Shown: piece by piece, positions 1-62,345 of the stretch
Layout of the letters: the number at the start of each line of letters is the position of its first letter
How positions within the stretch are numbered: position 1 is the stretch's first letter
From: Lytechinus pictus
Taxonomy: Eukaryota
Reading direction: 5' to 3'
Assembly: GCF_037042905.1 (NCBI RefSeq)
Contig: NC_087255.1
Coordinates: 14,074,001-14,138,000 of the forward strand
Length of the DNA stretch: 64,000 nucleotides
Notes under the pieces: model-generated
The model's input: the letters and a program-made list of their open reading frames with translations, nothing else
Told to the model about the DNA's origin: nothing
Database searches by the model: none
Translations under genes and position numbers: made by a program

Positions 1-42
1 GAGTGTACCATTGTGATCATTATGAAGACGAATCAACATGCA
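1..42 (+). CDS. Exon B0 (partial): end of LDLa module (..VYHCDHYEDESTC)
   Basis: Homologous to later 99-nt LDLa exons; donor GTAAGT at 43. Confidence 0.85.
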
Positions 43-123
43 GTAAGTCAAATAAAGAAAAAAAAAATGTTTTTTTGCCCTTTAAGCACCTATGATTTCA
101 TTTAAAAATTATTTCCATTTTAC

Positions 124-612
124 AGGTCAAGTCCACCCCAGAAAAATGCTGACTTGAATAAATAGAGAAAATCAAACTAGCAAAACGCTGAAAATTTTAG
201 CAAAATCGGATGTAAAATAATAAAGTTATGACGTTTTAAAATTTTGTTTATTTTTCACAAAACAGTGATATGCCATATCCAATGAGACAGTCGATGATGT
301 CCCTCACCCACTATTTCTTTTTTTTTTTTTTTTTTTTACAGATTTGACAATAAGTACCAACCTGACTGAATCATATAGTAGTAAACAATGCTCAGTCATT
401 ATGTTCAGGAAGGAATTAATTTTTTTTTGTATTTTCTTATATGAAATAGGGAATATTTTTCTCTTCATTGTCAAGTGAAACAAGGTTGTTTCACTTGACA
501 ATGAAGAGAAAAATATTCCCTATTTCATATAAGAAAATACAAAAAAATAATGTGTGGATGACGTCATCAGACTCCTCATTTGTATAACCACCAGGATGTG
601 CATATAACTTCA
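124..612. mobile_element. Truncated Kolobok-type MITE (AGGTCAAGTCCACCCC family)
   Basis: Homologous to copies at 13452, 37180-37320 (right end) and 58439. Confidence 0.7.
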
Positions 613-643
613 TAACCTTCCTTTCTCTCGATTTTATTAATAG

Positions 644-988
644 ATTACACTGCGACATATCTGCAATCAGGTGCATCTTATTCAGTCGACATACCACGCA
701 ACTACACAAGACGATTTTACCACGCAACCGTGCTACAAACAAACGATACGAATGGATTTCGAATCGTGTTCCAATATTTATATCTCTATTCTAGTCATCG
801 AATCCAAATAGGGGCAGGTACTGATCCGTCTGATCAACAATCTGTCATCACAACCATCAATGGATATAGAACTTGCTGCCCTGTTGATGTCTACGTAGAG
901 ACCAATAGGATGTGGATTGCTGTCATAGGAGGTCTGACTTACACCAATCTTGAGATTGAAGCGGACATCGTTGCTTTCAACATTTCAA
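644..988 (+). CDS. Exon A1: divergent CUB-like domain
   Basis: TAG acceptor 641-643, GTGAAT donor; 345 nt phase 1-1; FRIVF..IQIGxGxDP..ITTING..MWI motif. Confidence 0.88.
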
Positions 989-1246
989 GTGAATATTGAT
1001 ATTTTACTAGCAGTTTTATATTGTATAAGTATAGAAAAACTCGGTCCTGCCAACTTTCATTAAAAAATTATAAACCGATTAAAATATTAGCCTATTTTAA
1101 AGTAAATGAGATAGAAACACATTGAAATTAAGGATCAAAATGGTTGTGATCAGAAAATGTCAGTACACCTAGAATAAAGCATTGTCTGAATGTTGTGCTC
1201 ACATAGCAGTGCAATTTCTTCCTTCCCCCTTCTTTCTCCTTATCAG

Positions 1247-1345
1247 CTCTGTTTAATTGCCCGAGGAGCAATATGAACGTGTTATCAGATGTGCTGTGTG
1301 ATGGAGTGTATCATTGCGATCATTACGAAGATGAATTGGCATGCA
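1247..1345 (+). CDS. Exon B1: LDLa module (LFNCPRSNMNVLSDVLCDGVYHCDHYEDELAC)
   Basis: Polypyrimidine+CAG, GTAAGT; 99 nt; CDG..C...EDE..C. Confidence 0.9.
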
Positions 1346-2095
1346 GTAAGTCAAATCAAGAAGCATTCCTGTCTCTTGCGTACTTTTTATTCCATTTGCT
1401 TTCTATTTTGAGTAATTATGATTAAAGTATACTGATAGTGACAAAAAAAATCAAAATCAATATTTTGAGTGAAATATATTTGTCATCCGAAGTAGGAAGC
1501 TGGACGACCGCGATCATTCGCTTGCAAACTTACAGTATATACCATCATCTGGCAAATAATGTAGAGCCTGATACTTATGATGTATGAGTACACCTTTATG
1601 GCAGTCACACTGTTTGCTTTCACCCAGGTGTGCAAAAAACTGGTTATCATTATAATAGGCAAAAGCCTATAAATAAGAGAAACAAATAACTTCATCAGAT
1701 TCCCCTATACTTGTATCATTAGTTTTTGTCATTATAAGCCTTCATAAATCATAGAAATAAGGCATGTACTACCACTTGCACCGGAAGCAATGTGTGATTG
1801 GATAACACAGGTGAGTTCACTTTCCACATGTTCCAGGAACGTTAGATTTTTAATATGTTGACGTAAACCAGAACCTCATCTCAGAAAGATTTGTATAACA
1901 TTTAAATCAAACTGAAAATGCATTTAATAAAAAATTCCTTTCACTTAATTATACAGATATGAATCAATTGCAATCTGATTTACACTCCTACAAGCCGTTA
2001 TGAAATAATCGTGTGCTTAATAGACAAGCCGTAAATAAAGAGCAAAATGAGTCTTTAACAGGTTATTGTATGTGTCTTCCTCTGCACCCTCTCAG

Positions 2096-2437
2096 ATTAC
2101 TCAGCGACGTATGTACAATCAGGTGAATCTTATTCAATCGACATACCACGCAACTACACAAGACGATTTTACCACGCAACCTTGCTACAAACAAATGATA
2201 CGAATGGATTTAGAATCGTCTTCCAAAATTTCTATATCAGACATACCAATCAAATCCAAATAGGGACAGGTACTGATCCATCTGATCCAGAGTCTGTCAT
2301 CACAACTCTCTTTGGATATCGAAGCTCTTCTCATGATGTTTATGTGGAGACCAATAAGATGTGGATTTCTGTCATAGGAGGACTGGCTGACACCAATCTC
2401 TTCATAGATGTTGACATCTTTGCTATTGATCTCTCGA
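2096..2437 (+). CDS. Exon A2: CUB-like domain
   Basis: CAG acceptor, GTAAAT donor; 342 nt; open frame. Confidence 0.87.
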
Positions 2438-2796
2438 GTAAATAAATTTCATGCGACTTCACTTTCGTGGAGTTATATGGTATATAATTGGTAGGGCAAA
2501 GTTCAAAACATGAAATGTAACCACTTTAATGTTGAGTAATGAATCAAATCTTTAAAGATTGTCAAAACCTGCCACTTTTCACGCAAAAATTATAAAATTG
2601 ATGAGAATAAAACCTTTTCGACGGTAGTATGAGGGGTATGAGTAATATATCTAACAAAAATAAAACAAAACAGTAACACGGGTAGATTGAAGGTAGCAGT
2701 TGTAATCAGCAAATGCCATTGAATAATGCATTGTTATAACTTTCTGCTCATATAGCCGTACGATCTTTTCCTTCCCTTCTTTCTCCTCCAAATCAG

Positions 2797-2895
2797 CTCT
2801 TTTTAGCTGCCCAGTGAGCAATATGAACGTGTCATCAGATGTTCTATGTGATGGAGTGTACGATTGCGATCATTATGATGATGAATTGGCATGCA
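2797..2895 (+). CDS. Exon B2: LDLa module
   Basis: CAG/GTAAGT; 99 nt; LFSCPVSNMNVSSDVLCDGVYDCDHYDDELAC. Confidence 0.9.
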
Positions 2896-3848: not shown

Positions 3849-4193
3849 ATTACACTACGACGTATCTGCAATCAGGTGAATCTCATTCAATCGACATACC
3901 ACGCAACTACACAAGACGATTTTACCACGCAACCGTGCTGCAAACAAACGATACGAATGGATTTCGAATCGTGTTCCAAGATTTCTATATCAGATCTACC
4001 AATCAACTCCGAATTGGGACAGGTTCTGATCCCTCTGATCCAGAGACTGTCATCACAACTATCTATGGAACTACATATTGCTGTCCCTGGGATGTCTACA
4101 TAGAGTCCAATGAGATGTGGATTGGTGTCATAGGAGGACTTTATGACACCACTCTTGAGATTGATGCAGACATCGTTGCTTTTGACCTTTCAA
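3849..4193 (+). CDS. Exon A3: CUB-like domain
   Basis: TAG/GTAAAT; 345 nt; within ORF 3776..4273. Confidence 0.87.
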
Positions 4194-4466: not shown

Positions 4467-4565
4467 CCCTGTTTGATTGCCCGAGGAGCAATATGAACGT
4501 GTCATCAGATGTTCTGTGTGATGGAGTGTACCATTGCGATTATTATGAAGATGAATCGGCATGCA
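4467..4565 (+). CDS. Exon B3: LDLa module
   Basis: CAG/GTAAGT; 99 nt. Confidence 0.9.
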
Positions 4566-5514: not shown

Positions 5515-5859
5515 ATTACACTACGACGTATCTGCAATCAGGTGAATCTCATTCAATCGACATACCACGCAACTACACAAGACGATTTTACCACGCAACC
5601 GTGCTGCAAACAAACGATACGAATGGATTTCGAATCGTGTTCCAAGATTTCTATATCAGATCTACCAATCAACTCCAAATTGGGACAGGTACTGATCCCT
5701 CTGATCCAGAGTCTGTCATCACAACTATCTATGGAACTACATATTGCTGTCCCTGGGATGTCTACATAGAGTCCAATGAGATGTGGATTGGTGTCATAGG
5801 AGGACTTTATGACACCACTCTTGAGATTGATGCGGACATCGTTGCTTTTGACCTTTCAA
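5515..5859 (+). CDS. Exon A4: CUB-like domain (near-identical to A3)
   Basis: TAG/GTAAAT; 345 nt. Confidence 0.85.
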
Positions 5860-6132: not shown

Positions 6133-6231
6133 CCCTGTTTGATTGCCCGAGGAGCAATATGAACGTGTCATCAGATGTTCTGTGTGATGGAGTGTACCAT
6201 TGCGATTATTATGAAGATGAATCGGCATGCA
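6133..6231 (+). CDS. Exon B4: LDLa module
   Basis: CAG/GTAAGT; 99 nt. Confidence 0.88.
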
Positions 6232-8570
6232 GTAAGTAAAATATGGAAGCATTCCTGCCTCTTGCGTACTTTTTATTTCATTTGCTTTCTAATTTGAGTA
6301 ATAATAATTAAATTATACTGATAATGAAAACAAAAATCAGAATCAATATTTTGAGTGATATATAGTTGTCATCCGAAGTAGGAAACTGAACGACCGCGAT
6401 GTTTCGGTGGCAAACTGACAGTACCATCATTTGCTAATGTAGAGCCTGATACTTGATGTACGAGTACACCATTATGGCCGTCACTTTGATTGCTTTGCAA
6501 AACAGGTTATCATTATAATAGGCAAAGGCCTATAAATTAGAGAAACATATACCTAAATCCAATTCCCCTATACTTGTATCATTAGTCATTGTCATTATAA
6601 GCCTTCATAAAATCATAGTAATAAGGCATGCACTACCACTTGCACTGGAAGCATTGTGATTGGATAACACAGGTGGGTGCACTTTCCACATGTTCCAGGA
6701 ACGTTTAACTTTTAATGTGTAGAAGATAACCAGGACCTCGTCTCACAAAGATTTGTGAAACATTTCAATCAAACTGAAAATGCATTTGATAAAGATTCCC
6801 TTCACTCAATTATACAAATATAAGTTAATTGCAATCTGAGATTGTATGATATGATTTACACTCCTCGTTAAGTGCCGCGCTAGCGACAAGCCGTTATGAA
6901 ATAATCGCGTGCTCAATAGACGACAAGCCGTAAATTAGAAGCATTGTTGGTCAAAATGAGTCTTTAAAGCTCGTGGATAGTGTTGGTAAAGGATACAAAA
7001 ATTCCACTTGAATTGATCTTTTCCATTGAATAACAATTGCTGATAATAGTTCAATGAGAAATTGATAAAATTTCTTCTTGGAAATATTAAAATTTCAAAT
7101 AAACACTGAGAAATGAAATCATTTTCCTCGCTGAATTTAAACAGCATTTGGCTGAATTTACGGGCACTCACATAGCGCCCACTATCGTCCACGACTGATT
7201 TTCCCACCTGTTCGCCGATCGCTGGCCATTCCACTTTTACCAACCCGAAATATCCCTGCGAGCGTAGTCTGCTAATTCCGTGTGTACGCTCGCCAGTCGT
7301 TGTTATACCATGGTATCCGTCGAGTTTCTCCCCCAGCGAGTTCGGCGAGGAGCACAGTACAGGCAACGGTAACATTGTAAATAGATTGGTTAGAGAATAA
7401 ACCGGGATAATAATATAAAATATGTGGACTTACTTACCCTTATGATGTCCCTCCAACCTGTAGTTCACATGTTACTTAAGTTTGTTTTGACGTTCATGTA
7501 AACGTATATTCATGAAAACGTATTGGAGATGTTTCTGTGAAAATTTTGGCTACAAATTTTCTCGTGCGACAAGATGCAAGATTGGTTGAACCACGGGATA
7601 CATTGCACTACACTGCGACCGACATTGGCCACGCTCGCTGAGCAAAACATTCACATACACATTTTTGCGGGTATGACATTATCTTTATGGTGTACGATGA
7701 TTGTGGTCATGTTTTTCACGTCATATTTCAACGCATGCATTGGGGAAGGGAAATGGGAAGAAAAAGGGAGAAAAGAAAGAAAGGGAAAAGTAAACAAAAG
7801 GAAGAAAACAAGAAAAGGAAAAGAAAGAACATGGAGAGAAGAAAGGGAAGGAAAAGGAGGAGACTGATGTCGGCCTACTAGTGAGAAAGAACACTCGCGA
7901 AATACTAATAAATGATGGGGATTAAAAATATATATACATAAGAGATTGGAAAATGGAACGGGAATTTATCTCGGGAATGGGAAGGAAATGAGGCATAAGG
8001 AAACAGTAAGTTAGAATGGAACGAGCTAATATGATAGCAGGGGCGGATCCAGCTTTCGCCAATAATGGGGGGGGGGAATTTTTTCATCCATATTTTCCAC
8101 GATCGACCGCTATAAGCAGGAGGGGGGGGGCTGGGCACTTTTTTTCCAAAACCGTGTACAAAAACGTAAAAATTACCATAGGATTGTGATTTTTTGCGTG
8201 GTCAGCCCCACCCCCCCCCCCCGACTTTGCAAACCGTTCCGCGGCCCCTGTAACAGTCAGCTTTATTCTTATAAAACAACATAAATGTATATTCCTATAA
8301 GTCCTGTTCAAAAGTACGAGCGTATAAAGTGAGAGCTAAATTTTTTTTGAAATGTCATATTTTTCCTGAAAAAAAAAGTTCTGAGTAATGTTTTTGATCC
8401 TGAGCAAGATTCGTACAACTAATAACTACTGCGAACATGAACGTGAAGCGCGAGCCTGATAGAAAAGGACCAGTTCTGATTGCAGTATAGCCATGACGAT
8501 ACGTAGGCCTATTTCAACAATCGAATAATGTGAGTGCGAAGTGCGAGCCGATCATTTTTTACATTCAAAC

Positions 8571-8837
8571 CGCTAGCGTACCTACGGGGGGGGGGGGCAG
8601 TCTGTCCCCCTGACGAGCCACAACCCATGCAAAAGACGTATCCCTGCCCCCCCCCCCTCAGTGACGAGCTTGAAAGACCTGTTTTGCCCCCCCCCCCCCT
8701 GACAGATTTGAAGACATTTATTGCCCCCCTGACGAGCTTGAAGACCTTTTTTTTTTTTTTTTTTTTTGCTTGTCAAATTTTTTGGCGGAGGGTTTTGCCC
8801 CCCCCCCCCCCTGTGGAAAATCCTAGGAACGCCACTG
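8571..8837. mobile_element. hAT-type MITE with 8-bp TSD ATTCAAAC
   Basis: TSD at 8563-8570 and 8838-8845; TIR-like C(G/A)STRGCGT..CTA; second copy 14121-14366. Confidence 0.8.
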
Positions 8838-9755
8838 ATTCAAACCAAGAAAATTGACATTCTAAGCATTTTTTGTATTCCTGAACTGGATAGGTATATA
8901 ACTAAACAATACGAGCGCTAAGCGCGATGGGAAAAAAATGAGATTTAGAGCTAAAAACGAGACACTATACTAGCATGACTAGTATTCGTATTTTGTAATT
9001 CGTGAAGATGGGTATAATTAGTTATCTTCCTACATCTATAAGTGCGAGCAGAAAATTTTTGATATTTTGATCTGAAAACGTCAATATAAGCACTAGTTTC
9101 AAACAATGAAAATGAAAATTGTAAATTGGAGTTGGATCGCACTTAAGATTCGAGCGCGAAGCGCGAGCTGATATTCTAAGGACATTTTGTCATCATATGA
9201 AAATGGTAATTATCTTCCTATTAGTCTCCCTAATCACGAGATGAAACTTGTCGACATTCTGAAAAAAGGACAATATAATTGTTGGGAATTCATGAAATTG
9301 TTATCTTATTTACTACTCTGATAAGCCCGATGAGAGCGAGAAATTAGTTGATATCAAGTTCGGAAAACTGGATATTCTTAGCATTTTTGTATTAATGAAT
9401 AGAAGGCATTGGTTGATACATCTTTAACAATTAATGCAAGCACAAATCACGAACCGAAAATTTTGATAAATTGTCATGAAAAGGGATTTAGAATAGTTTG
9501 TTATAGAGTTAAATTTCTCACCAATCAAAATGCGAGCGCGCATCGCTAGCTGATAGGTTTTGACAATTAGACATGAAAAGGAATATTTTGAGAATTTATG
9601 GAATATATGAGAACTAGAGAATGGGTACTTGACAAATAATGCTAGCTAGCGCGTAGCGTGAGCTGCATTGATAATGAGACCATAAAACGGATTACGGCTG
9701 CACATTAAAAGAAAATGTAAATCAAACAAAATAATAACGGCTCGATGTCCGAGCT

Positions 9756-9976
9756 NNNNNNNNNNNNNNNNNNNNNNNNNNNNNNNNNNNNNNNNNNNNN
9801 NNNNNNNNNNNNNNNNNNNNNNNNNNNNNNNNNNNNNNNNNNNNNNNNNNNNNNNNNNNNNNNNNNNNNNNNNNNNNNNNNNNNNNNNNNNNNNNNNNNN
9901 NNNNNNNNNNNNNNNNNNNNNNNNNNNNNNNNNNNNNNNNNNNNNNNNNNNNNNNNNNNNNNNNNNNNNNNNNNNA
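9756..9976. other. Assembly gap (221 N)
   Basis: Run of n. Confidence 1.
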
Positions 9977-11617
9977 GATTTGTATCTCGACATCAAACAT
10001 GCGAGCGCGAGCGAAAAACTTATATAATGATATGAAAGATTCTTTTTTTTCCAAGCCTTCCCCTCACCTTATTTTATTTACTTGCCTTTCTCCTCTATCC
10101 CCCATTCTTTTTCTCTCCTCTTTTTTCCCTTTTCCTTTTTTAGAATTTTCCTTTTTTCGTTTTCTTCATTTTACTTTTTTCGTTTTTTCCGCCACTATAG
10201 GGGGACCCGGGTACTTCGCCCCCTAGATCGGCCTATGTGATAGCGATGAAGCTGAATTGAAAAATGAAGAGAAGGGATTAAGGAAAAGTGGAATTGGGCC
10301 CATAAAGACACATCCGGATTGACGTTTGAGGATTATTAAAAAAAAAAAAAGAACGGGAGTAAAAAAATGTGATGACGTATGTGCCATGAAGTCTATATCC
10401 TATTTAATGCTAAATCCTAGCCAAAGAATTTGGGGGCATACCCCCCCCCCCCCCCCCATTTTCGCTTTCACCGCCGTGTATGTATGGGTGTCCAGTGTTG
10501 GTCTTCCCGGGGTTGGATAACTGACACAGTTAAGTTTGGTCCCTGATGTGAGTATTTCTTTTTTACATTTAGGCCTATTATCTATCATTATCATTATGAT
10601 TATTTTTTTTTGAGGGGGGGGGGGGGTGTCAGTTCCATAACCAGTCTAAAATTTGTATGGGGGACAGAATTGCACAAAAGGATAAAATTATTAATAGAAA
10701 AGCTGCGATCGAGCGAGCAATTTTTTTTACCCTTTGAATTCAATACAAAAATGTAACTTTGTGTTCAGTATATTTTGACGTGATACTTGTCATGTCATGT
10801 TTCACCCTTCTCTTTTACTATTCTTTTCTCTTCAAGGGGGGGGGGGCAATGCACCAGGATGGGGGTAGACCAAGACTGAGTGTTATAAGGATTATATCAG
10901 CAATGCTAGCGCGAGTTTAGATGCTACCAGAATCATGATCATAATAATAATGTTACTCCCTCCTTATCATGATCATACTTGTCATTATAATTCATAAAAA
11001 ATTATGTCGTTCGAAGTAAGGGAAGTTTATCATGTTAATGTATCCCCTATCACCATGGATCGACACTCACCACCCCCCCCCCCTCCCCCGAACTCTGAGC
11101 AATTCCTGGAGGGTAGTGATGGAGCCGGACTCGTATTATTTTAGAGAAAAATGGGGAAAGGGGAGTATAGGGAGTGTGCATGCGCGTAAATGGATCTCAA
11201 TTTATTTGAAAGGGGGAAGAGGTCATCTATGTCAACTAGTGGGTTATTCATGTTTCATTCTAGGTGTTTTTTGTACAGTGTAGTGTAATTTTAGGGTATA
11301 TCCAAGGAGATATCACCTCTAAAAGTTAGAGGTGATATCTCCTTGGTATATCTTAATTTTTGGATGTATATGGGAATTCATGAATATGGTATTATGAAAA
11401 ATGATAGAAATTAAGTGCAAGAGATGTTTCTTTTATCATTTTCTTCCCTAACTCATCTTTTCATTCCCTCCCTCTTCTTTTTTTTTACTGAGCTTCCCTT
11501 TTCGCCGCCAATAGAGGGGGGGCCTAACTGGCCGCTTCGCCCCCATGGATTTGAAAGCCTTGCCTATATACATAATGATCCTGTCTTCATTACAGAATAT
11601 TTTCACTTTAAATTTCC

Positions 11618-12600
11618 ACAAAGGCGGATTTAGGGGGGCGAGGGAGTAGGACCGTCCCCCTTTTTGGCGGAGCAAAAGCAAAATGAAAAAAAGGGGGAAA
11701 GAAACAAAAACGAAAAAGAAGGGGGAAAAGAAATAAGTGAAATATGAGGAGGAAGACGAATGAATAAAATAAGATGAGGGGAAGACTTGGAAAATAAAAC
11801 AAATCTTTCATGTCACTTGATAAAATTTTTGCTCACTGTTCGTGCTCGTATAGCCTGGTAGGTTATTTACATATCATGCACAATATGGACTTTGAAGTAT
11901 CAAATTTTAAAGTCAATATACAGAACATACTTATGCTCAGTAATCGAACTTTCATTTCAAAAGTTACAAATTGATTGTTCTGTAAAAATGTCACTTTTAT
12001 GGTCTGAATATTAGTATCTTCTACTCGCGCTGTGTAAAATTTGATTGGTTTATAGGTAGGCCTATATACCTATATTATTTTCCAGGTCTACCTATACGCT
12101 CGCGCTTCGCTCTCGCATCATTGTTCAGTGATATACCTATCCTGTTCACGTTTACAAAAAAAAACTTAGAATTTCCCTTCTTTAGGTAAAAAACATTGCG
12201 CTCGCACCATTTTATTGTTGAAACATGTAACGCATTCATTGCTAACTGCAAGAAGTCCTTGACAAAAAAAAATTCTACTCACTCTTCCAGTAATTATTTG
12301 CATACACAATGTGTTCAGGACCACAAACATTGCCTAGAATGATCAAATTTTAGGACAAAACACATACAATTTCAAAAGCAAAATTCGTTCGCGCTTCGCG
12401 CTCGAACTATTCAGATAAGGCTTATGAGATTATTATATATTCTTGCTGATTTTTAAGAATAAAGGTAGAGAGGTGCACTGTTAGGGCTATACCCCTTCAA
12501 ATAAACATACACAAATCAACTTCGAGCTGCCGATCGGGGAAAATATGGCAGAAACATATATGATCCGCCCCCGATCAGCGAAGGCTGGATCCGTGTCTGT
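11618..12600 (-). mobile_element. hAT-like element, GCGCTTCGCGCTCGC family
   Basis: Inverted homolog of 8038-10237. Confidence 0.55.
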
Positions 12601-13451
12601 ATCCGATATATTATTTGTAAAGATGCCTCTACAAAGGAGCTATGTAGTCCTTTACTAAATTGTATTTCTGCTCATACTCATCAGAAAGGTCCAAATTGGA
12701 AACTCGAAACTGAGCATGTACCCATTGCCATTTTGCCAGGGTATAGGTGCATGAACAACTTTTGTTTCTTAGCAATCGATTTATCAGTATAGTTGATGTA
12801 ATTTTCAGTCCATATCAAATTGGAAAGAATGTGTCAGGCAAGCTCCCAATTTATAGTAAAACGGTTCTTATAAAATTTTACGTTGTGAAGAAAGTTTGAA
12901 TATGGTCACTCGTTTCGTGTTAGATGTCAAGTAAGATTTTTATTTTATTTTATTGGAACGGGTAAAATGAACATTGAGCATTGTCACAGCACCCCCAGTA
13001 ACAATAAAGATCATCCTCCGTGGCCAGGTCCATGATTATTTCAATGCACTATATGAATTTTGTTGCAATAATTTAGGCCGATAACGCAACATATTTTTTT
13101 ACAGCTTTTCTCTCATAAATTCAGTCCGATTGACAATATCCGGATATTTATCCATTTTATAATGAGGGACGTACGTATATGTGCATGACTTGTTTGTCAA
13201 GTTAGAAACGGAAAGTTGCAATAAAGTTTTGAAGGCTCCATCATTGTCAGAACAAATTCCCAACGACGCGATCTAGCCCCCCCCCCCCTTTCTTCAGTTC
13301 TTTCTTTCTTTATCTACTAATTTCTGTCTTGCATTTTTCCTTCTCGTTCTCAGTTTCTTCTTGCTTATAAATGACTTGAAAATCAGTGCTTATAATTAAA
13401 TCATTGTCACTAGCTGCAATTTTTGCACCGCGCACATGGTTCAATGTTTAA

Positions 13452-13940
13452 AGGTCCCGTCCACCCCAGAAAGTGTTGATTTGAATCAATTAATAGAAAA
13501 AAATCTAGCAAGCATGATTTTGAAAATGTCACCAAAACCGGATGTGAAATGAATGAAATGAAATTGTTTGAATTATATAATCTTAGAGATTTGAAAATAA
13601 GGACCAACTTGACTGCAACCATTAAAATGTAATCCACAACGGTTATTCCACATATTCAGGAACAAATAACACTTTTTGTCACATTTCAATGAGGAGGAAA
13701 TTAGATAGTCATATTGCATATACAACTAAAAGAGGTGTATGCCGTCATCAGTCATATACAGAACAGGATGTGCATATAAATTACTGTTCTGTGAAATTAT
13801 GAACATACACAAATCTTACATCCGATTATCATGATCATAAAATCATAATCATAACAAAAAAATTCATCCGATTTTGATGAAATGTTCAGTGCTTGGATTT
13901 TTCTTTTTATTCAAATAAACCTTGGGATGGACTCCACCGA
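13452..13940. mobile_element. Kolobok-type MITE copy
   Basis: TTAA|AGGTCCCGTCCACCCC start; long imperfect inverted arms. Confidence 0.65.
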
Positions 13941-14120
13941 CTCCATTGGACTTCGTTCAATCGATCGCTGTGCTTCCTTTATGTGGATACAAAACATATA
14001 TTTGGACGGTTAGTAGCAGATCAAGTGACAGTTTGCCATATTTTTCCACATGAATATGACCCCGCCCCCAAAAAAACACGTTATAAAAATATATATCTCA
14101 TTCGAGTCTAAAGTATATAG

Positions 14121-14366
14121 CACTAGCGTACCTACGGGGACATTCTGCCCCCCCCCCCCTGACGACCCACCTACAAAGGACGTATCCCTGCCCCCCCCCC
14201 CCCTGACGAGCTTGAAGCCCCCCCCCCCCTTTTTTTTTTGCTTGTCAATTTTTTTCTGGTACGATATCTTTTTTTTGTGATTGAAGACCTTTTTTTTTGC
14301 TTGTCAAATTTTTTGGCGGACGGCTTTGCCCCCCCCCCCTTGTGGAAAATCCTAGGTACGCCACTG
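14121..14366. mobile_element. hAT-type MITE, same family as 8571-8837
   Basis: CACTAGCGTACCTACG...CCTAGGTACGCCACTG; TSD not preserved. Confidence 0.7.
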
Positions 14367-16261
14367 ATAAGAAGGTAAAATCTGCGCACATCGATCACTG
14401 AATGTATGAATAGAGATCTGAGAAGTGAGACAGATATTCATAACAGTATAACATTTGGTGACCCATAATATGGCATCAGTGCCCCCCCCCCCCATTGCCA
14501 GTTATAAAGAGAAAGGGGGAAATTGAAATATGGAGAAAAATATGACGATCGAGGCCCTAATTATCGACGTTACACCCAACCCAAATTTCTTTTTTTTTGG
14601 CAGGCCTAGTTAGTTTATTTAGTGATTTACCATGTGAAATGACCTACATCCAGTTATGGAAAAATATACTTTCAAACTGAATGTCATTATTTACAGAACT
14701 TTATCCAATAATTAATTACAAGTTCATTACTATTTCCATAGGATTGCCAGTTTTCCAAAATTTGACACTGGCATGCTGAGGTTTAGTTAGAGATTATCTC
14801 TGGGCAGGAGATGAGTTCTTGTCCATAGGTCCATGCCCTGACAGAACACGAGAAAAGAGCACATGCATGGAACAACACATAAAAACCAGTTGACTGAACT
14901 ATGTCCATGGGCCATGCATGTGCATGGTGCAGGGCAAATGTGTTTTTGACCTCCTTAGTCCTTACGTAACCTCAAGGAGCTTCCAGCTCCTTGGTAACCT
15001 GCAGTGATTCTTCAACACAAATACACACATCCCTGCCTCGCACACACACACACACACACACGTATCCAGGCCTACTGTACTACCAACACACACTGCCAAG
15101 GCGCATACTGTACTAGTCTATAAATTCAGACACAGTTTACCCAAAGACGGTTAATATATCATTTTAGTGAGAAATCAGTGCATTTCCAAAACATAAACAT
15201 GATGCATAATCTTGGAATTTCCTTTGTAAGGGTTTCTTTCTGTTGGTTTTATTTCCCTTTTTTCTCTTGGTTCATCAGTATCATAGAATAAAACGTTTTT
15301 ATGAATCGATCTGAAACAATTATGAGCTGAGACTAAAACGCGGATAGTCAGAGAAGAACCCAAAAGAAGTTTTTTTTCTTCCAATTCTGTGCTAGTTGTA
15401 TTCATTCTGAATTGAGTTTTATGAATTGTTCCCGTGTTATCTCGGCAGTGAGAGAGCATATTTATGTGCAACAGCGTATCACATCGTGGTCCACTTCTTT
15501 TTTTTTTTTTTTGAAATGGGGACGATCGGGTTTGTTTATCGAATGCAAGCCCCAGCCAAGGCAAGAGCATGCAAGCTGCAAGGAAGGTAGGAAAAACAGA
15601 GTGGTGTTGCATGTTGTGCATAGCGCATGTGAGGAACGTATATACTGATTCTAATAGTAATATCGATATGCGATCGATGCTTTTTAGATCTAAAGTCTGC
15701 TCTGCCGTTCATTGTAATGTGATGCAAGAAAATCAGGAAAACGCAATGTATCAACGAGCTTTATAAAACTGACTGACAACTCAATTGTGTAGCGGACTAC
15801 ATTATCGTTCTCGCGTAGCACACGCACGGCAGCAGCGGTGATGCGCACTGTGGTGTCTGTGCGTTTCAATTCTCGGGTATCCCGGTAGAATTGATTCACT
15901 CATAAAAGAGCATAATTTATCATGAAAAACACCATTTCATTTCATATCATTTACATCATGACTGTTTAAGGGCATACCCATTCATATTATATACAAATTA
16001 GTTAGAATGGTGACAGGCCGATTTCGAGGAATTTACCAAAACTATCCACCCTCTTTAACAGGTTATATGTCTTACTCTGCACCATCTTAGATTATCCAGC
16101 GACGTATCTGCCATCAGGTGAATCACATTCAATCTACATACCACACAAAAGTAATGGAATGTTGTAACACTGTATCACAGTGTTGTGATTGTATGTTCTT
16201 TATGGTAGATTAGGTCAAACATCTTATCCATAACCTTCCTTTCTCTCGATTTTATTAATAG

Positions 16262-16600
16262 ATTACACTGCGACGTACCTGCAATCAGGTGAATCTTATT
16301 CAATCGACATACCACGCAACTACACTAGACGATTTTACCACGCAACCGTGCTACAATCAAATGATACGAATGGATTTCGAATCGTGTTTCAAGATTTGTT
16401 TATCAGATATACCAATCAAATCCAAATTGGGACAGGTACTGATCCATCTGATCCACAGTCTGTCATCACAACTCTTTATGGTACTAGAAGCTCTTCTGAT
16501 GATGTCTATGTGGAGACCAATAAAATGTGGATTGCTGTCATAGGTCTGACTTTCACCAATCTTGAGATTGATGCGGACATCATTGCTTTCGACCTTTCAA
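16262..16600 (+). CDS. Exon A5: CUB-like domain
   Basis: TAG/GTGAGT; 339 nt. Confidence 0.88.
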
Positions 16601-16857: not shown

Positions 16858-16956
16858 CTCTGTTTAGCTGCCCAGTGAGCAATATGAACGTGTCATCAGA
16901 TGTTCTATGTGATGGAGTGTACCATTGCGATCATTATGAAGATGAATCGGCATGCA
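16858..16956 (+). CDS. Exon B5: LDLa module
   Basis: CAG/GTAAGT; 99 nt. Confidence 0.9.
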
Positions 16957-17743: not shown

Positions 17744-18088
17744 ATTATTCAACGACGTATCTGCAAGCAGGAGAGTCACATTCAATCGACATATCACGCA
17801 ACTACACCAGACGATTTTACCACACAACCTTGCTACAAACAAATGATACGAATGGATTTCGAATCGTGTTCAAAGATTCATATCTGTATTCTAGTAATCA
17901 AATCCAAATAGGGAAAGGTACCGATCCGTCTGATCAACAATCTGTCATCACAACCATCAATGGATACAGATACTGCTGCCCTGTTGATGTATATGAAGAG
18001 GCCAATGAGTTGTGGATGTCTGTCATTGGAGGACTGACTTACACCAATATCTTTATTGACGTTAATATCATTGCTATTGACCTGAGAA
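17744..18088 (+). CDS. Exon A6: CUB-like domain
   Basis: TAG/GTAAAT; 345 nt. Confidence 0.87.
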
Positions 18089-24475: not shown

Positions 24476-24574
24476 AATCCTTTCATTGTCCAGTCTCGAG
24501 CAGAAATATATCAGTAACCTTGGCATGTGATGGATATTATGACTGCGATAATTTCGAGGATGAATTATATTGTA
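24476..24574 (+). CDS. Exon B6: LDLa module (SFHCPVSSRNISVTLACDGYYDCDNFEDELYC)
   Basis: TAG/GTAAGT; 99 nt. Confidence 0.9.
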
Positions 24575-26319: not shown

Positions 26320-26670
26320 ATAACCCAGTTACACACCTCGAGGAAGGCCAATCACATTCTATCAGAACGCCATCTTTCACAAGAGAATTCTACAATACAA
26401 CCTTGTTAAAAGCAAATACTACAAATGGATTTCGAATTGTGTTCCATCGTTTGTATCTCAATTATTATGATGACGAAATCCGAATAGGGACAGGGAACGA
26501 TCCATCTGATATCCAGTCTATTGTAACAACTATCCATGGATATGCATACTACGAGGATGATATGTACATAGATAACCATAAAATGTGGATTGTTGTCATA
26601 GGATCAAAACAGTACAGTCATTCATATCATCTTGATCTGGACATTAGTATTACTGCCATCGATTTATTTA
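26320..26670 (+). CDS. Exon A7: CUB-like domain
   Basis: TAG/GTGAGT; 351 nt. Confidence 0.88.
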
Positions 26671-27037: not shown

Positions 27038-27136
27038 ATTCTTTTCCTTGTACGTCGTCTTACATGAACGTGCCAGTGACGTTGGTTTGTGATGGATATT
27101 ACGACTGCGATAATTATGAAGACGAATCGTTATGCG
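27038..27136 (+). CDS. Exon B7: LDLa module (SFPCTSSYMNVPVTLVCDGYYDCDNYEDESLC)
   Basis: CAG/GTAAGA; 99 nt. Confidence 0.9.
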
Positions 27137-37835: not shown

Positions 37836-37933
37836 ATTTATTACAGATTATATATTTGTTGTGATCACATCAATTTTTATGTTCCTTCTGCTACATTATT
37901 TTAAATCATTTTAAATGATTTTATTTTTCACAG

Positions 37934-38281
37934 AATATCCCGCAAGCTTTCTACAAAAAGGTGAGTCATATTTTATCTACCTCACACACAACACAACGCG
38001 CAGACGATCATACGATACTCACCTTTTGCAAACGGATACTACGAATGGATTTCAAATTATATTCAGGGATTTATATCTCTATTATGGCGAACAAATCCAG
38101 ATAGGGAAAGGTACTGATCCGTCTGATCTACAGTCTGTCATTACAGCCATCAATGGATATAGACATTGCTGTCCCAGTGATGTTTATGTAGAGAGCAGTG
38201 ATATGTGGATCGCGATCATAGGAGGCATGGAATACTACAACCTTGAAGTATATGCTGAGATAATATCTACTGATCTTTCCA
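37934..38281 (+). CDS. Exon A8: CUB-like domain
   Basis: CAG/GTAAGT; 348 nt. Confidence 0.88.
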
Positions 38282-38566: not shown

Positions 38567-38665
38567 CTTTATATAGATGTTCGATTTCTGACAAATTTGT
38601 TCCAACGTCAGCCCTTTGCGATGGATTTTACCATTGTGATCATTTTGAGGATGAATTAGCGTGCA
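38567..38665 (+). CDS. Exon B8: LDLa module (LYRCSISDKFVPTSALCDGFYHCDHFEDELAC)
   Basis: TAG/GTAAGT; 99 nt. Confidence 0.9.
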
Positions 38666-39325: not shown

Positions 39326-39721
39326 ATCACTCAACAAGGTTTTTAGCCTCTGGCCAGTCCACTTTCATCACCGCTTATTTCGTGGACAGCGGACATTTTG
39401 GTATATCTGTTCTAAGCACAAACGCGACTGCAATATTTCGACTCGAGTCCCAGGAGGATCATCGTCAAAACAGTGAGGAAACAATTCTAATAGGAACCGG
39501 AAATGACGTCAAATCAGCTATTAGAACGTTCCATGGAGATACTCCATACCATGCTGATATATACGTAGGATCAAATGTGATTTGGATTGCTATTGTTGGT
39601 CATAAGGACTACAACTACTACGGGAACTATCATGACTCTTATGAGAGTTATTATGACTCATATGACTATAGTTATGACAATAGTGACATCAATCTCAAGG
39701 TCACTGCAATTGACAGGTCTG
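39326..39721 (+). CDS. Exon A9: CUB-like domain with Tyr/Asp-rich insertion
   Basis: TAG/GTAAGT; 396 nt. Confidence 0.86.
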
Positions 39722-40589: not shown

Positions 40590-40688
40590 ATCTACAGGAA
40601 TGCGGAATGACTGGCCTGTCTTTCTCAAATAATGACCGATGTGATGAAGTATTTACGTGTCCAGACTTTGCCGATGAAGAAGAGTGCA
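40590..40688 (+). CDS. Exon B9: LDLa module (LQECGMTGLSFSNNDRCDEVFTCPDFADEEEC)
   Basis: TAG/GTGAGA; 99 nt. Confidence 0.86.
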
Positions 40689-42196: not shown

Positions 42197-42583
42197 GTCA
42201 TCCATCCATTTTTCTCCTTGAAAACGAAAATTACACAATTGCCTTTTCCGATATCAAAGCAGAGACCTACAATGAAACACTTTTTAAGACCAGCGCTTCA
42301 AATGGATTTCGAATAAGGTTTTTGGATATCTACCTTGCTTGCTATGATTATTATAGTTATGGACAATGCGACGATGCTGTCATTCAGATAGGCACCGGAT
42401 ATGGTAGTGCTAACAGCCGATCGATCGTGAAAACACTTCGTGCTTTTACTTATTTCGAGGACGATGTTCATGTGGATTCCAGTGAGATGTGGATATCAAT
42501 CAGCGGTATATGGAGATATGACACGTATGGCTCAAACGCGTACGGCTATGGCGAGATGGAATTGAGCACTGCCAGGTTGAATA
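42197..42583 (+). CDS. Exon A10: CUB-like domain
   Basis: CAG/GTACGT; 387 nt. Confidence 0.84.
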
Positions 42584-43599: not shown

Positions 43600-43698
43600 G
43601 TCTGAGACCCTGTGCCAACTCGAATCGGGTGATTTCTCAAGACAATATCTGTGACGGATTTTATCAATGCGATGATTATTCGGATGAAATATCTTGCG
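43600..43698 (+). CDS. Exon B10: LDLa module (LRPCANSNRVISQDNICDGFYQCDDYSDEISC)
   Basis: AAG/GTAAGT; 99 nt. Confidence 0.87.
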
Positions 43699-44349: not shown

Positions 44350-44697
44350 ATAACGCAGAGGTAGTTTTGCATGAAGGAGAATCGTTTGGCATAAAGGTTG
44401 TAAATGCTGCACGTAGATCATATAATACTACGATACTTCAAACGAATGTAACATTGGGATTCCGAGTGCATGTCGGCTCCTCCGACTACGGGGATTGGTA
44501 CGGAGCTCGTATTGCAATTGGTACACGTAACAACTCAAGTCCAATCTATGAATGGTCCTCGACCAGTAACTACAATTATTTCTCCAATGACTATGATGTG
44601 TATGTGACGACGAATGAAATATGGACTGCCATCATTGGTGGTGTTTACCATGCGTATGGGTCTATGGAATTCAATGTCACTTCGGTTGATATACCAG
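44350..44697 (+). CDS. Exon A11: CUB-like domain
   Basis: AAG/GTAAGC; 348 nt. Confidence 0.84.
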
Positions 44698-45751: not shown

Positions 45752-45853
45752 ACTTGTATACCTGCCCGGGAAACTCCCATATCGGAATTCCTCAGAGTAG
45801 ACTGTGTGATGGAAGGTATGACTGCAGCAATTATGAAGATGAATCGTCATGCA
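45752..45853 (+). CDS. Exon B11: LDLa module (LYTCPGNSHIGIPQSRLCDGRYDCSNYEDESSC)
   Basis: CAG/GTAAGT; 102 nt. Confidence 0.9.
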
Positions 45854-54104: not shown

Positions 54105-54518
54105 ACGAATCTTCAATACTTATAAACGACGAGACGTTTTACTTCAGTGTCTACACTTGGGTCTACGATTATCAAAGACTTTACAGAGATTGGCTCTTCG
54201 AAACGAACACTGGAAATAGCTTTCGTGTTGACCTGTATATAAACGTGGAATGCTATAACTATTACTGTAGACAAGGTCATGAAGGTGGACATGATGGAGT
54301 GTTCAGTCTTATTATTGGGACAGGAAAAGATTCAACCAACCAGGAGTCAGTTGTTCAAACATTCACTACCGAGATTACTTATTGGCCATACTTTAGGAGT
54401 TATGAAGAGTTGTATGTTGACAGCCAAGAAATATGGATTGTTTTGATTGGTCCGCAGTTTGTTGGATATGGTGACAACAGCGCAATTAATTTAGAAATAA
54501 ATGGCGTTAACATGTCTG
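54105..54518 (+). CDS. Exon A12: CUB-like domain (most divergent)
   Basis: TAG/GTGAGT; 414 nt; LIIGTGKD and EIWIVL motifs. Confidence 0.83.
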
Positions 54519-55848: not shown

Positions 55849-55947
55849 GATGGATACCATGCAAGGATTCAAAAACAAGTGTGTCTCCAGATTACGCATG
55901 TAACGGTCGGTACGAATGCGACGATTACGGAGATGAAATATCATGTG
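55849..55947 (+). CDS. Exon B12: LDLa module (WIPCKDSKTSVSPDYACNGRYECDDYGDEISC)
   Basis: TAG/GTAAGG; 99 nt. Confidence 0.87.
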
Positions 55948-56536: not shown

Positions 56537-56539
56537 CTG

Positions 56540-57425: not shown

Positions 57426-57776
57426 ATCGTTCACCGACCATCATCAGTGAAGGGGAATCTTATGCCATCTCAGATTTGGAATTGTTTGAACGGGAATACC
57501 ATGCCTTAATTATACAAACCAACCAATACTCTAGATTTCATATCAGGTTCCAACATATCTCTCTTGGCTGTTGTGATGAGCGTGTGCAGATCGGAACGGG
57601 GACTGATCTATCTGACGAAGATTCCGTTATAATGTCCATCCAGGGATATACGAATTATGTCGATGATGTTTATGTGAATACTACCCACATGTGGCTTGTC
57701 ATGACTGGTCATAAGGACTCTGACAACTATCCTAATGGTCATGTCGATATGATTGTCACTGCTACCTCTCTTTCTG
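57426..57776 (+). CDS. Exon A13: CUB-like domain (last; no LDLa follows)
   Basis: CAG/GTGAGT; 351 nt. Confidence 0.87.
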
Positions 57777-60071: not shown

Positions 60072-60182
60072 GTGGATGTCTCTCAAACCCCTGTCTAAAC
60101 GGAGGAACTTGCAATCACATTGCTGATGGCGGATACCGATGTGACTGCATGAATACCTTTACCGGACTCAACTGTGAAATAG
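60072..60182 (+). CDS. EGF-like domain exon 1 (CLSNPCLNGGTC...CDC...TGLNCE)
   Basis: AAG/GTTTGT; 111 nt; six-Cys EGF pattern. Confidence 0.9.
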
Positions 60183-60680
60183 GTTTGTGCAAACTGGCAA
60201 AGCCCCCCCCCCCCCTCCCCCAAAATATATATATTTTTTTTGTTTTACACAGTTTGCCTTTCCTGGAAGATATCTCTGACTCATTTCACCTTTTATCTTA
60301 TGCTACGACCGTGATATATACGATATTTTGCCAGTTTTTTTTTTAATCTGACAGAGGTAAACACCAAATATTAGTTTTGATTGCACAGATGCTATTATCG
60401 GGCTTAACTGAATGACTTGTGTGCAACCAGGATAAGGTCATACGAAGAACACATAAATGTTTACAGTTTGCATTTTCTAAAAAGATATCATTTGGAAAAG
60501 TCTGTACAAAGTGAGCTTCATACGAATTTTGGGAGACTGTTGTGAATAATGCTTCAACGATTACATGTTGACTGAAATAGCATGCAGTGTGTCTTCCACT
60601 TCCTGAAAGAGTCATTACATATTCTTGGCCCTAGATTCCTATTAAACACTACTGTCTTCTTCCCCCCTATTCATTATTTA

Positions 60681-60712
<32 letters not shown>

Positions 60713-60717
60713 TACAG

Positions 60718-60843
60718 CAAACACCAATCCCTGTGTCGAACGAAATCCGTGTGTCCATGGTGTCTGCATTAACATAGGACAAGAACGGTACGAGTGCGAA
60801 TGCCAAGATAATTATGACGGGATTCATTGTGATGAACCCATTC
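60718..60843 (+). CDS. EGF-like domain exon 2
   Basis: CAG/GTAAGT; 126 nt; NPCVERNPCVHGVCIN...YECEC...GIHCD. Confidence 0.9.
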
Positions 60844-61275
60844 GTAAGTAATAGCATTCCTATCTCCATATTATAAATTATTGTTTCGGGCAAAGCATTT
60901 CAACTCAATGTTTTTATTTCACAACTAGCAAATATTTACCCGACGTTTATATCAAATTCATTACTGAGTTGAAGAAACATCAGCTTATTTAAGAGAAGAC
61001 TGATTGTTTTCGAAAGCTCTTTATTACGAAAATGAAACCCTCTCTTGGGTCTTATGTTAAAAGTTTCGTTGAATAATTATGTATAAACATGTCGTTCCAG
61101 ACATGGAAGACGATGCCCGAGCGACACGATAAAACCAAGTTTTTAAACATAGGCCTAATTATTTGTGACATTCTTGTTCTCCTATTGTCTTGCACACTTA
61201 CCACCATTGTCTTCTTCATCATTGTAATAATCGTTATCTTTCCATATTGCTCGCAATCTCATGGTCCTATTCTAG

Positions 61276-61548
61276 TTCCAATAGAGGTTTCTCAGCATCC
61301 GTCTAGCCAAATAGTCAATATCAATGCCATTGTAAACCTGACATGCGGTTTCAACCATGCCAAGCGTTACCACTGGTACAAAACTGTCAGGGAAGAGGGA
61401 TACGGTGTCCTTTTGCCAGACAGTGAGAATCGGAATCCATTGATAATCACGTCTGCCTCACACAATGACATCGGGTATTACTTCTGTAGAGGTGAAGGTA
61501 GAAATGGAGAAACTTTGGAGACGGCGCGAGCATCTGTATATCTTAGAG
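61276..61548 (+). CDS. Immunoglobulin (I-set-like) domain exon
   Basis: TAG/GTAAAT; 273 nt; HPSSQ..VNLTC..YHWYK..DIGYYFC. Confidence 0.9.
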
Positions 61549-62232
61549 GTAAATACAATCATCTAAGATGCAACCTTTTCGACTTTAGTTTAGATTTTTA
61601 CTTCCTCGGACTACCAGCTGGTACAGCTAGTTACCTTTGTTCTGGATGCTCTCGAATCCTAGCATTCTCGAAGAGTAAACCATGGCTTCTTACATGTATA
61701 TTGAATACCATTCATAACCAAAATCACCTATTTTTTATTTCCGTGTCATGGATCGACATAGTAGGTCTACCTTCTTAATAATCACATGATATTTCCTTTC
61801 TGCTCAAATTCCGGTTATGATTTTTTGTTGAAACATGACAATAAATTTGTTCTTACCTGAATCCCCTGAATGTAACACTAACCTTAAAGCAGATTCGAAC
61901 CAATAGCGCCATCTTGAGTCATCAGCTACTCATACCTGGCCAGTTTCTTGACCCATAATGTTAGTGTAGTCAAGTAATATAGACCCATTTAAATGATAAC
62001 ATGTTGATTAACTACTCAATACATTTATACCTCAATATTTATGTTACCAAGTATATCAAAACATTTTAGTTTCTCTATACAAATACAATTATAGGTCAGT
62101 TTATTATCTGTAGTATTAGTATACATGTATATCTGAAAACGTATATTTTAAGACTGTGTTTATAACACACAAGCAATGAGAGACCACACAGTACACCCCC
62201 CTTCCTTTTAATTCCTGTCTGTTTTTTTCCAG

Positions 62233-62345
62233 ATCTAACCAATTTAGAGGTTTTGAATGTTCGATTTGCTACTCCATTTCGCGAAGAGCTTCGTGACCAA
62301 ACTTCAATAATGTATAAAGAAACAGCTTCCTATATCACCACCTTT
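62233..62345 (+). CDS. Exon encoding N-terminal part of a SEA-like domain (LNVRFATPFREELRDQTSIMYKETAS)
   Basis: Long polypyrimidine tract+CAG, GTGAGT; F..eL.d..S..Y pattern typical of SEA. Confidence 0.72.

What the first reader, a model, noticed from the sequence alone, without database searches (positions are those of the whole stretch)
1..62345. Giant receptor ectodomain built from a tandem array of an atypical two-domain unit (Cys-poor CUB-like + 4-Cys LDLa)
Seen: 13 A exons (339-414 nt) alternate strictly with LDLa exons (12 complete, 99-102 nt, plus a partial one at the window start), followed by EGF-EGF-Ig-SEA, all in frame. Knowledge: the A domain keeps the echinoderm CUB core (F.i.F, iG.G.dP, ..G, mWi) but has lost the canonical CUB cysteines, SPNYP and FxSD..GF. 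Inference: a lineage-specific repeat unit on a membrane receptor. EGF-Ig-SEA is a plausible membrane-proximal arrangement of long-N-terminus adhesion GPCRs. Like the EBR repeats of the egg bindin receptor, this could be a fast-evolving recognition surface (gamete, immune or self/non-self).
Basis: partly seen in the sequence, partly recalled or inferred. Interest (0 to 1): 0.8.

Follow-up and report, generated by a model that had tools for sequence, protein, structure and literature searches.

The report
Sea-urchin adhesion GPCR with LDLa–CUB array
The window holds most of the giant extracellular part of a sea-urchin-specific adhesion G-protein-coupled receptor gene, built from 21 tandem pairs of a reduced LDL-receptor module and a cysteine-poor CUB domain; this copy has lost the exon for its first membrane helix.

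Summary
The window has 13 A exons (339-414 nt) alternating with 12 complete B exons (99-102 nt) plus a partial B exon at base 1, then EGF, EGF, Ig and the first SEA exon. All have AG/GT borders, and all repeat exons are phase 1.

A is a CUB fold: AlphaFold pLDDT 89, Foldseek TM 0.7-0.8 to many CUB structures. It has no Pfam CUB hit and no conserved cysteines. B is an LDLa module lacking the first and third cysteines.

The gene runs beyond the window on both sides. Upstream lie a signal-peptide exon and eight more units (21 in all). Downstream lie the second SEA exon, a Cys-rich linker, GAIN/GPS and 7tm_2 exons. From ATG to the GPS exon, 54 exons give 3,873 codons without a stop.

This copy, however, lacks the TM1 exon through a clean 643-bp deletion.

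The genome (Lytechinus pictus) has 96 A exons, all in five arrays within 0.9 Mb. The assembly gap sits in an inserted element inside an intron. No RNA evidence was obtained. I found no publication on this family.

The parts
1..42 (+). 3' end of a B (4-Cys LDLa) exon; the exon starts 56 nt before the window
644..988 (+). A exon (CUB-like), unit 9 of 21
1247..1345 (+). B exon (4-Cys LDLa)
2096..2437 (+). A exon, unit 10
2797..2895 (+). B exon
3849..4193 (+). A exon, unit 11 (99% identical in DNA to unit 12)
4467..4565 (+). B exon
5515..5859 (+). A exon, unit 12
6133..6231 (+). B exon
6968..16051 (.). 9.1-kb insertion inside a standard B-to-A intron; it contains the assembly gap 9756-9975
16262..16600 (+). 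A exon, unit 13 (339 nt)
16858..16956 (+). B exon
17744..18088 (+). A exon, unit 14 (last of the young, similar units)
24476..24574 (+). B exon
26320..26670 (+). A exon, unit 15 (first of the old, diverged units)
27038..27136 (+). B exon
37934..38281 (+). A exon, unit 16
38567..38665 (+). B exon
39326..39721 (+). A exon, unit 17 (Tyr/Asp-rich loop insertion)
40590..40688 (+). B exon (most diverged copy)
42197..42583 (+). A exon, unit 18
43600..43698 (+). B exon
44350..44697 (+). A exon, unit 19
45752..45853 (+). B exon (102 nt)
54105..54518 (+). A exon, unit 20 (414 nt; fastest-evolving between paralogues, omega 0.88)
55849..55947 (+). B exon
57426..57776 (+). A exon, unit 21 (last; followed directly by EGF)
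60072..60182 (+). EGF exon 1
   Evidence: Pfam PF00008, 28.9 bits; borders
60718..60843 (+). EGF exon 2
   Evidence: Pfam PF00008, 28.9 bits
61276..61548 (+). Ig exon
   Evidence: Pfam Ig_3, 31.7 bits
62233..62345 (+). First SEA exon; the second lies at 64201-64420, just past the window
   Evidence: 76% identical (tblastn) to the SEA region of paralogue protein P0074; that region scores SEA 33.3 bits

Best explanation
The window is the middle of a gene of about 99 kb in Lytechinus pictus that belongs to a sea-urchin-specific adhesion-GPCR family. The encoded chain runs in this order: signal peptide; 21 tandem units, each a 33-residue LDLa module that keeps only cysteines 2, 4, 5 and 6, followed by a roughly 115-residue CUB-fold domain without the canonical disulfides; two EGF domains; one Ig; one SEA; a conserved Cys-rich linker; a GAIN domain with an intact HL/T cleavage site and a TNFAVLM tethered-agonist core; then 7TM exons. 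Every repeat exon is phase 1, so units can be duplicated, converted or skipped without breaking the frame. The 14 outer units are young copies and the 7 inner ones are old. In intact family members the inferred mechanism is the usual one for adhesion GPCRs. The long glycosylated N-terminal fragment binds a partner, probably through the acidic pockets of the LDLa modules, and pull on it exposes the tethered agonist, which switches on the 7TM. In this copy, as assembled, a 643-bp deletion has removed the TM1 exon. The predicted product is therefore a protein of about 3,900 residues that ends just after the GPS and has no membrane helix. It would be either a secreted form or a very young pseudogene.
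For: Exon structure and a 3,873-codon open frame over 54 AG/GT exons. A is a CUB fold: AF2 pLDDT 89, Foldseek TMq 0.70-0.80 to TSG-6, NRP2, C1r, PCPE-1 and enteropeptidase CUBs. The A profile also hits multi-CUB cubilin-like proteins at E 1e-23. B is LDLa: invariant C, C-D-G, C, D-E, C; PF00057 above threshold in multi-unit orthologues; hhalign probability 84%. The two-domain unit folds as one body (pLDDT 89.8, pTM 0.85). GPS scores 44 bits and the 7tm_2 exons lie on the same strand 7-12 kb past the window. Three paralogues are colinear from unit 20 to TM7. L. variegatus and S. purpuratus models carry units, EGF, Ig, SEA, GPS and 7tm_2 in one protein. The TM1 deletion has flanks 99.7% identical to the paralogue and a 4-bp GGCA microhomology, and the genome holds 3 GPS exons of this family but only 2 TM1 exons. 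The constraint gradient runs from omega 0.04 (7TM) to 0.88 (unit 20).
Against: Splicing, expression and the link from SEA to GAIN therefore rest on frame logic, paralogue colinearity and gene models of other species. The deletion could be an assembly error or the allele of one haplotype. TM2-TM7 show no decay (1 non-synonymous against 5 synonymous differences in the TM2-4 exon versus the paralogue). Ligand binding, Ca2+ binding by B and GAIN cleavage are inferred from family knowledge and were not tested.
Confidence: 0.7

Rival explanations
1. The gene is a fully functional adhesion GPCR of about 4,260 residues, and the missing TM1 exon is an assembly artefact or a deletion carried by only one haplotype.
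For: All other exons, including TM2-TM7 and the tail, are open and 97-99% identical to the intact upstream paralogue. The region is a 96-98% identical segmental duplicate, where assemblers often err.
Against: The junction is clean, with 4-bp microhomology and 99.7% identical flanks, which is typical of a real deletion. The assembly holds three GPS exons of this family but only two TM1 exons.
Confidence: 0.2
2. The LDLa-CUB array is a separate secreted-protein gene that is not spliced to the downstream GAIN/7TM exons.
For: S. purpuratus LOC100888963 has a signal peptide, six units and EGF repeats with no TM. Two of the five arrays in this genome have no close Ig, GPS or TM1 exon behind them.
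Against: The frame stays open through all 54 exons to the GPS, with matching splice phases. The EGF-Ig-SEA-GAIN-7TM block is colinear with the array in three paralogues. L. variegatus and S. purpuratus models join both parts.
Confidence: 0.07
3. The whole locus is a dead duplicate, and the open frames merely reflect its youth.
For: TM1 loss would frameshift the 7TM. The 3' part is only 2-4% diverged from the paralogue.
Against: The seven inner units and the EGF-Ig-SEA part are 8-15% diverged from the paralogue yet are all open, with omega 0.2-0.55. All 43 repeat exons keep their splice sites.
Confidence: 0.1

Closest known systems
ADGRG6 (GPR126) and ADGRG2 (GPR64), vertebrate adhesion GPCRs
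   Same: These are the best solved-structure matches of the GAIN and 7TM part (E 2e-41 and 1e-42). ADGRG6 also has an N-terminal CUB, a SEA domain, then GAIN/GPS and 7TM, with the same HL/T site and tethered-agonist motif.
   Different: ADGRG6 has one canonical CUB (by family knowledge disulfide-bonded and Ca2+-binding), a pentraxin domain and HormR, and no LDLa, EGF or Ig. Here there are 21 degenerate CUBs, each paired with a 4-Cys LDLa. No Pfam HormR match was found for the linker. Subfamily membership was not tested by phylogeny.
Uncharacterized sea-urchin models: L. variegatus LOC121423798, S. purpuratus LOC100891145 (isoforms X1-X3), L. pictus 'adhesion GPCR G2-like'
   Same: They have the same unit, the same EGF-Ig-SEA-linker-GAIN-7TM order and a homologous signal peptide.
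   Different: The models hold only 2-4 units, against 21 here. None carries a descriptive name or a publication that I could find.
Enteropeptidase, matriptase/TMPRSS6, LRP12 and NETO: proteins that mix LDLa and CUB
   Same: LDLa and CUB modules sit side by side. Enteropeptidase CUBs are the best sequence match in the PDB (E 0.06) and are among the top fold matches. Enteropeptidase also has a SEA domain.
   Different: By family knowledge those proteins use canonical six-Cys LDLa and disulfide-bonded CUBs in one to a few copies, on proteases or single-pass receptors rather than on a GPCR.
Sea-urchin egg bindin receptor EBR1
   Same: It is a long tandem array of a two-domain unit containing CUB, on an echinoid extracellular protein, with lineage-specific repeat numbers.
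   Different: The EBR repeats pair TSP1 with canonical CUB on an ADAMTS-like protein. No sequence relation was tested here.
Amphioxus adhesion GPCRs with LDLa and CUB in the N-terminus (PMC2246102)
   Same: This is a precedent for LDLa and CUB on invertebrate deuterostome adhesion GPCRs.
   Different: The passages I read list them only as domains found in the N-termini and say nothing of arrays or reduced cysteine patterns.

Membership tests
CUB domain | A beta-sandwich of about 110 residues with the CUB topology | tested here: met
   AF2 model pLDDT 89, ten strands. The top Foldseek hits are mostly CUB domains (TSG-6, NRP2, C1r, MASP, PCPE-1, spermadhesins), TMq 0.65-0.80 over the full length.
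CUB domain | Match to the Pfam CUB model PF00431 | tested here: not met
   No hit for four A exons at E up to 1. The A profile reaches canonical multi-CUB proteins only by summing many weak stretches (E 1e-23). hhalign against one canonical CUB gave E 0.14.
CUB domain | Four conserved cysteines forming two disulfides | tested here: not met
   No invariant cysteine across the 13 copies of the window, and none conserved in the alignment of all 21 copies.
CUB domain | Ca2+-binding Tyr/Glu/Asp/Asp set of the ligand-binding CUB subclass | tested here: inconclusive
   In the HMM alignment to enteropeptidase CUB2 the expected acidic positions are not conserved in A. That alignment is weak.
LDL-receptor class A module | Six cysteines forming three disulfides | tested here: not met
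   Only four invariant cysteines. By spacing they are Cys2, 4, 5 and 6, so the Cys1-Cys3 pair is absent.
LDL-receptor class A module | Acidic C-D-G...D-E calcium-cage motif and a match to PF00057 | tested here: met
   C-D-G and D-E are invariant or nearly so. A single exon scores 18.4 bits, below the 24.1 cut-off. Multi-unit relatives score 44.7, 37.4 and 25.7 bits. hhalign probability is 84%. The fourth side-chain ligand position is His in most outer copies.
Adhesion GPCR (class B2) | GAIN domain ending in a GPS motif with an HL/T site | tested here: met
   PF01825 scores 44.2 bits at window coordinates 71337-71537, with the motif C-x-C-D-H-L-T-N-F-A-V-L-M. GAIN subdomain A is hit only weakly.
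Adhesion GPCR (class B2) | A complete seven-helix 7tm_2 domain | tested here: not met
   TM2-TM7 exons are present, but the TM1 exon is deleted in this copy. The feature is met in the paralogue and orthologue proteins (7tm_2 120-126 bits).
Adhesion GPCR (class B2) | N-terminal fragment and 7TM on one transcript | not testable with these tools
Indirect support comes from the open frame, colinear paralogues and gene models of two other species.
SEA domain | Match to PF01390 | tested here: met
   The in-window exon alone gives no hit. The whole domain in paralogue protein P0074 scores 33.3 bits, above the 26.4 cut-off. A Gly-Ser pair lies at the place of the autoproteolysis motif; cleavage was not tested.

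The most novel reading that the evidence does not exclude
The five arrays (96 phase-1 CUB-like cassette exons that exchange segments by gene conversion, and that are variably included in predicted isoforms) could form a diversifying recognition system. Individual- or cell-specific combinations of units on a GAIN/7TM signalling module would serve gamete, immune or self/non-self discrimination. Copies without a 7TM, such as this one, would act as soluble decoys or opsonin-like forms.
Probability: 0.1. Interest if true: 0.8.

Novelty: new variant of a known kind. Interest (0 to 1): 0.45.

Why it matters
Adhesion GPCRs are thought to sense pull on, or binding to, their N-terminal fragment. This family offers natural paralogues and predicted isoforms that differ mainly in the number of one repeat unit (2-4 in the annotated models, 21 in this gene). 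That makes it a natural series for asking how stalk length and unit number affect signalling. The family also defines a CUB subfamily that Pfam's CUB model misses, and an LDLa variant with two disulfides. Both explain why public annotation leaves these genes fragmented and unnamed. Finally, the locus shows how symmetric-phase exons let a receptor ectodomain expand several-fold within one genus.

Tried and rejected
RNA evidence: two run searches found only small shares.

Locating an annotated L. pictus model through the look-up of encoding contigs found nothing.

Pfam on single A exons gave nothing. hhalign of the A profile against one canonical CUB was not significant.

I suspected the Cys-rich linker between SEA and GAIN to be HormR-like, by its position and Cys/Trp pattern. 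It gave no Pfam match even at E 10, so that reading is left open.

I looked for domain-wide positive selection in the units. Mean omega is about 0.5 among the 14 young units, and only 3 of 91 pairs have dN greater than dS, so the claim is not supported at that level.

Four literature searches found no description of this family.

I considered and rejected the idea that the assembly gap hides units or breaks the frame.

I also considered that the long canonical-CUB proteins among the profile hits might be orthologues. They are cubilin-like, protease, polycystin or mucin-like proteins with ordinary CUBs.
Full report
**Observation.** Translating the + strand shows 13 open segments with a shared motif set of about 115 residues. 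Between them lie 12 short segments with a C...C-D-G...C...D-E...C pattern. The window also starts inside a thirteenth such segment. Every one has a polypyrimidine-AG acceptor and a GT donor in phase 1. A exons are 339-414 nt. B exons are 99 nt, except one of 102 nt. After the last A exon come two EGF exons (PF00008, 28.9 bits each), an Ig exon (Ig_3, 31.7 bits) and an exon that matches the first half of the SEA domain of paralogue proteins.

**The assembly gap.** The gap at 9756-9975 lies between a B exon (6133-6231) and an A exon (16262-16600). The first 736 nt of that intron match the standard short B-to-A intron of the neighbouring units (for instance 4566-5302, 96.7%). The last 210 nt match the end of that standard intron (5296-5514, 87.7%). 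The standard 946-nt intron is thus fully accounted for, and it has been split by a 9.1-kb insertion (6968-16051) that contains the gap. No exon is interrupted, and phase-1 exons on both sides keep the frame.

**What A and B are.** An alignment of the 13 A copies has no invariant cysteine; the invariant or nearly invariant residues are Phe, Ile, Gly, Gly, Asp, Tyr, Trp and Gly.
- Pfam gives no CUB hit for A.
- An AlphaFold model built from that alignment is confident (pLDDT 89, pTM 0.82, ten strands).
- Foldseek returns mainly CUB domains over the full length: TSG-6, neuropilin, C1r, MASP, PCPE-1, enteropeptidase, TMPRSS6, spermadhesins and DMBT1, with TM 0.65-0.80 normalised to the query.
- The A profile searched against 1.84 billion representatives finds only 61 proteins. 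The strong ones whose source names a species are all sea-urchin 'uncharacterized' proteins. The weaker ones are multi-CUB proteins such as hemichordate cubilin-like proteins (E 1e-23 summed over 13 CUBs).
- A is therefore a divergent, disulfide-free CUB subfamily.

B keeps four invariant cysteines, C-D-G and D-E. By spacing these are Cys2, 4, 5 and 6 of the LDLa module, so the Cys1-Cys3 disulfide is gone. A single exon scores below the Pfam cut-off (18.4 bits against 24.1). Multi-unit relatives pass it (44.7 and 37.4 bits; 25.7 bits), and hhalign against a canonical LDLa gives 84% probability. A model of one B-A pair is confident as a single body (pLDDT 89.8, pTM 0.85). Its fold matches again centre on CUB, and enteropeptidase chains align over both modules at high rmsd.

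**The whole gene.** The window is C11:14074001-14138000 of an 812-Mb genome. The contig length equals that recorded for a Lytechinus pictus RefSeq protein, so the organism is L. pictus.
- Upstream flanks hold eight more A and nine more B exons. At window coordinate -23248 there is an exon encoding a signal peptide homologous to the N-termini of L. variegatus and S. purpuratus relatives.
- Downstream lie the second SEA exon (64201-64420), two exons for a Cys-rich linker that looks well conserved when set beside the S. purpuratus protein (read by eye), GAIN exons, a GPS exon (71337-71537; PF01825, 44 bits; motif C-D-H-L-T-N-F-A-V-L-M), and 7tm_2 exons up to about 76036.
- Joining 54 exons from the ATG to the end of the GPS exon gives 11,619 nt and 3,873 codons. 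There is no stop, there are 81 N-glycosylation sequons, and no strongly hydrophobic 19-residue stretch appears.

Indirect evidence is consistent.
- The frame is open and the splice phases fit.
- Three paralogues on the same chromosome are colinear from unit 20 through TM7.
- Gene models of other species contain both parts. L. variegatus LOC121423798 has four units, EGF, Ig, SEA, GPS and 7tm_2. S. purpuratus LOC100891145 has 4, 3 or 2 units in isoforms X1 to X3. X2 differs from X1 by one exact 153-residue unit-length deletion with no other mismatch.
- Among solved structures, the GAIN and 7TM part is closest to ADGRG2 (1e-42), ADGRG6 (2e-41) and ADGRL3 (9e-40).

**The missing TM1 exon.** Between the GPS and TM2 exons this copy has only 400 nt, and no frame there encodes a helix. 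Compared with the upstream paralogue it lacks a 643-bp block between 71628 and 71629. The flanks are 301/302 and 370/372 identical, and GGCA occurs at both borders of the block. In the paralogue that block holds the TM1 exon; the third paralogue also has a TM1 exon in the same GPS-TM2 interval. Genome-wide there are three GPS exons of this family but only two TM1 exons. The TM1 exon starts in phase 0 and ends in phase 2, so splicing GPS directly to TM2 shifts the frame and stops at residue 3912. Read-through instead stops after nine codons. As assembled, this copy therefore encodes no membrane helix. TM2-TM7 show no decay. The loss is thus very recent, or limited to one haplotype, or an assembly error.

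**Family and dynamics.** All 96 A exons in the genome lie on C11 between 13.50 and 14.40 Mb. They form five arrays of 31 (plus one partial), 15, 17, 21 and 11 exons, every one open.
- Within this gene the 14 outer units are 77-99% identical in DNA. Neighbouring pairs have dS as low as 0.013, and mean omega is about 0.5. Nearest relatives change along the exon, which fits gene conversion between units.
- The seven inner units are old (dN 0.4-0.9).
- Between this gene and the third paralogue, omega rises from the membrane outward: 0.04 (TM2-4), 0.08 (GPS), 0.07-0.11 (linker), 0.33-0.38 (SEA, Ig), 0.39 (unit 21) and 0.88 (unit 20). This shows much weaker constraint, or diversification at some sites, in the outer modules. 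It is not proof of positive selection.

**Mechanism.**
- Shown: domain order, intact GPS and tethered-agonist motifs, unit structure, and the TM1 loss.
- Inferred from family knowledge: in intact members the N-terminal fragment stays bound after GAIN cleavage, and its removal or pull exposes the agonist to the 7TM. The LDLa modules keep three of the four acidic side-chain ligands of the calcium cage, so they are the likelier binding sites. The CUBs have lost their usual calcium site and probably act as variable spacers or surfaces.
- For this copy, the predicted product is a secreted protein that ends at the GAIN domain, or there is no product at all.

**Novelty.** LDLa and CUB have been reported on amphioxus adhesion GPCRs (PMC2246102). 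Vertebrate ADGRG6 has a CUB and a SEA domain (my knowledge), and a BAI3 CUB structure appears among the fold hits. What is new here is threefold: a strict array of a reduced LDLa plus a disulfide-free CUB; its scale (21 units, and about 4,260 residues if the 7TM were intact); and the five-array cluster. Orthologues exist in public annotation but are unnamed, and I found no paper on them.

Noticed in passing
just outside the window: window coordinates 71628/71629 = G000:C11:14145628/9 (L004:7628): A 643-bp deletion relative to the upstream paralogue removes the TM1 exon of the 7TM domain. It has 4-bp GGCA microhomology at the junction.
   Followed up: yes
G000:C11:13.50-14.40 Mb: All 96 A-type exons of the genome lie here, in five arrays of 31 (plus one partial), 15, 17, 21 and 11. 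The first two arrays have no closely related Ig, GPS or TM1 exon behind them. Only distant Ig-like exons (37-38% identity) occur at C11:13636255 and C11:13845232.
   Followed up: partly
window 57000-64000 and on to 80600, versus window coordinates -79434 to -48187: This is a segmental duplicate of the gene's 3' part. Identity is 85-92% up to about 63700 and then jumps to 96-98% from 64094 onward, suggesting a recent conversion tract or a second duplication event.
   Followed up: partly
window 61885-62204: A repeat of about 320 bp in the Ig-to-SEA intron has at least 40 copies across many chromosomes at 82-86% identity (SINE-like).
   Followed up: no
window 29405-30263: A C-rich tandem repeat gives long overlapping open frames in three + frames with a repeating peptide pattern. 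It lies in the 10.8-kb intron next to the mobile element noted by another reader.
   Followed up: no
window 31963-34802, minus strand: Two long ORFs (211 and 372 aa) lie on the opposite strand inside the same intron. They belong to the tyrosine-recombinase element flagged in finding s1-306803.
   Followed up: no
window 644-18088 and upstream units: The nearest relative of a unit changes along the A exon (for example unit 3: first third nearest unit 4, middle nearest unit 13, last third nearest unit 10). This fits the mosaic or gene-conversion reading of finding s1-306878.
   Followed up: partly
P0078, P0079, P0080 (S. purpuratus LOC100891145 isoforms): The predicted isoforms differ by whole units. 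X2 equals X1 minus exactly 153 residues, with no other mismatch, which suggests cassette skipping of the phase-1 exon pairs.
   Followed up: partly
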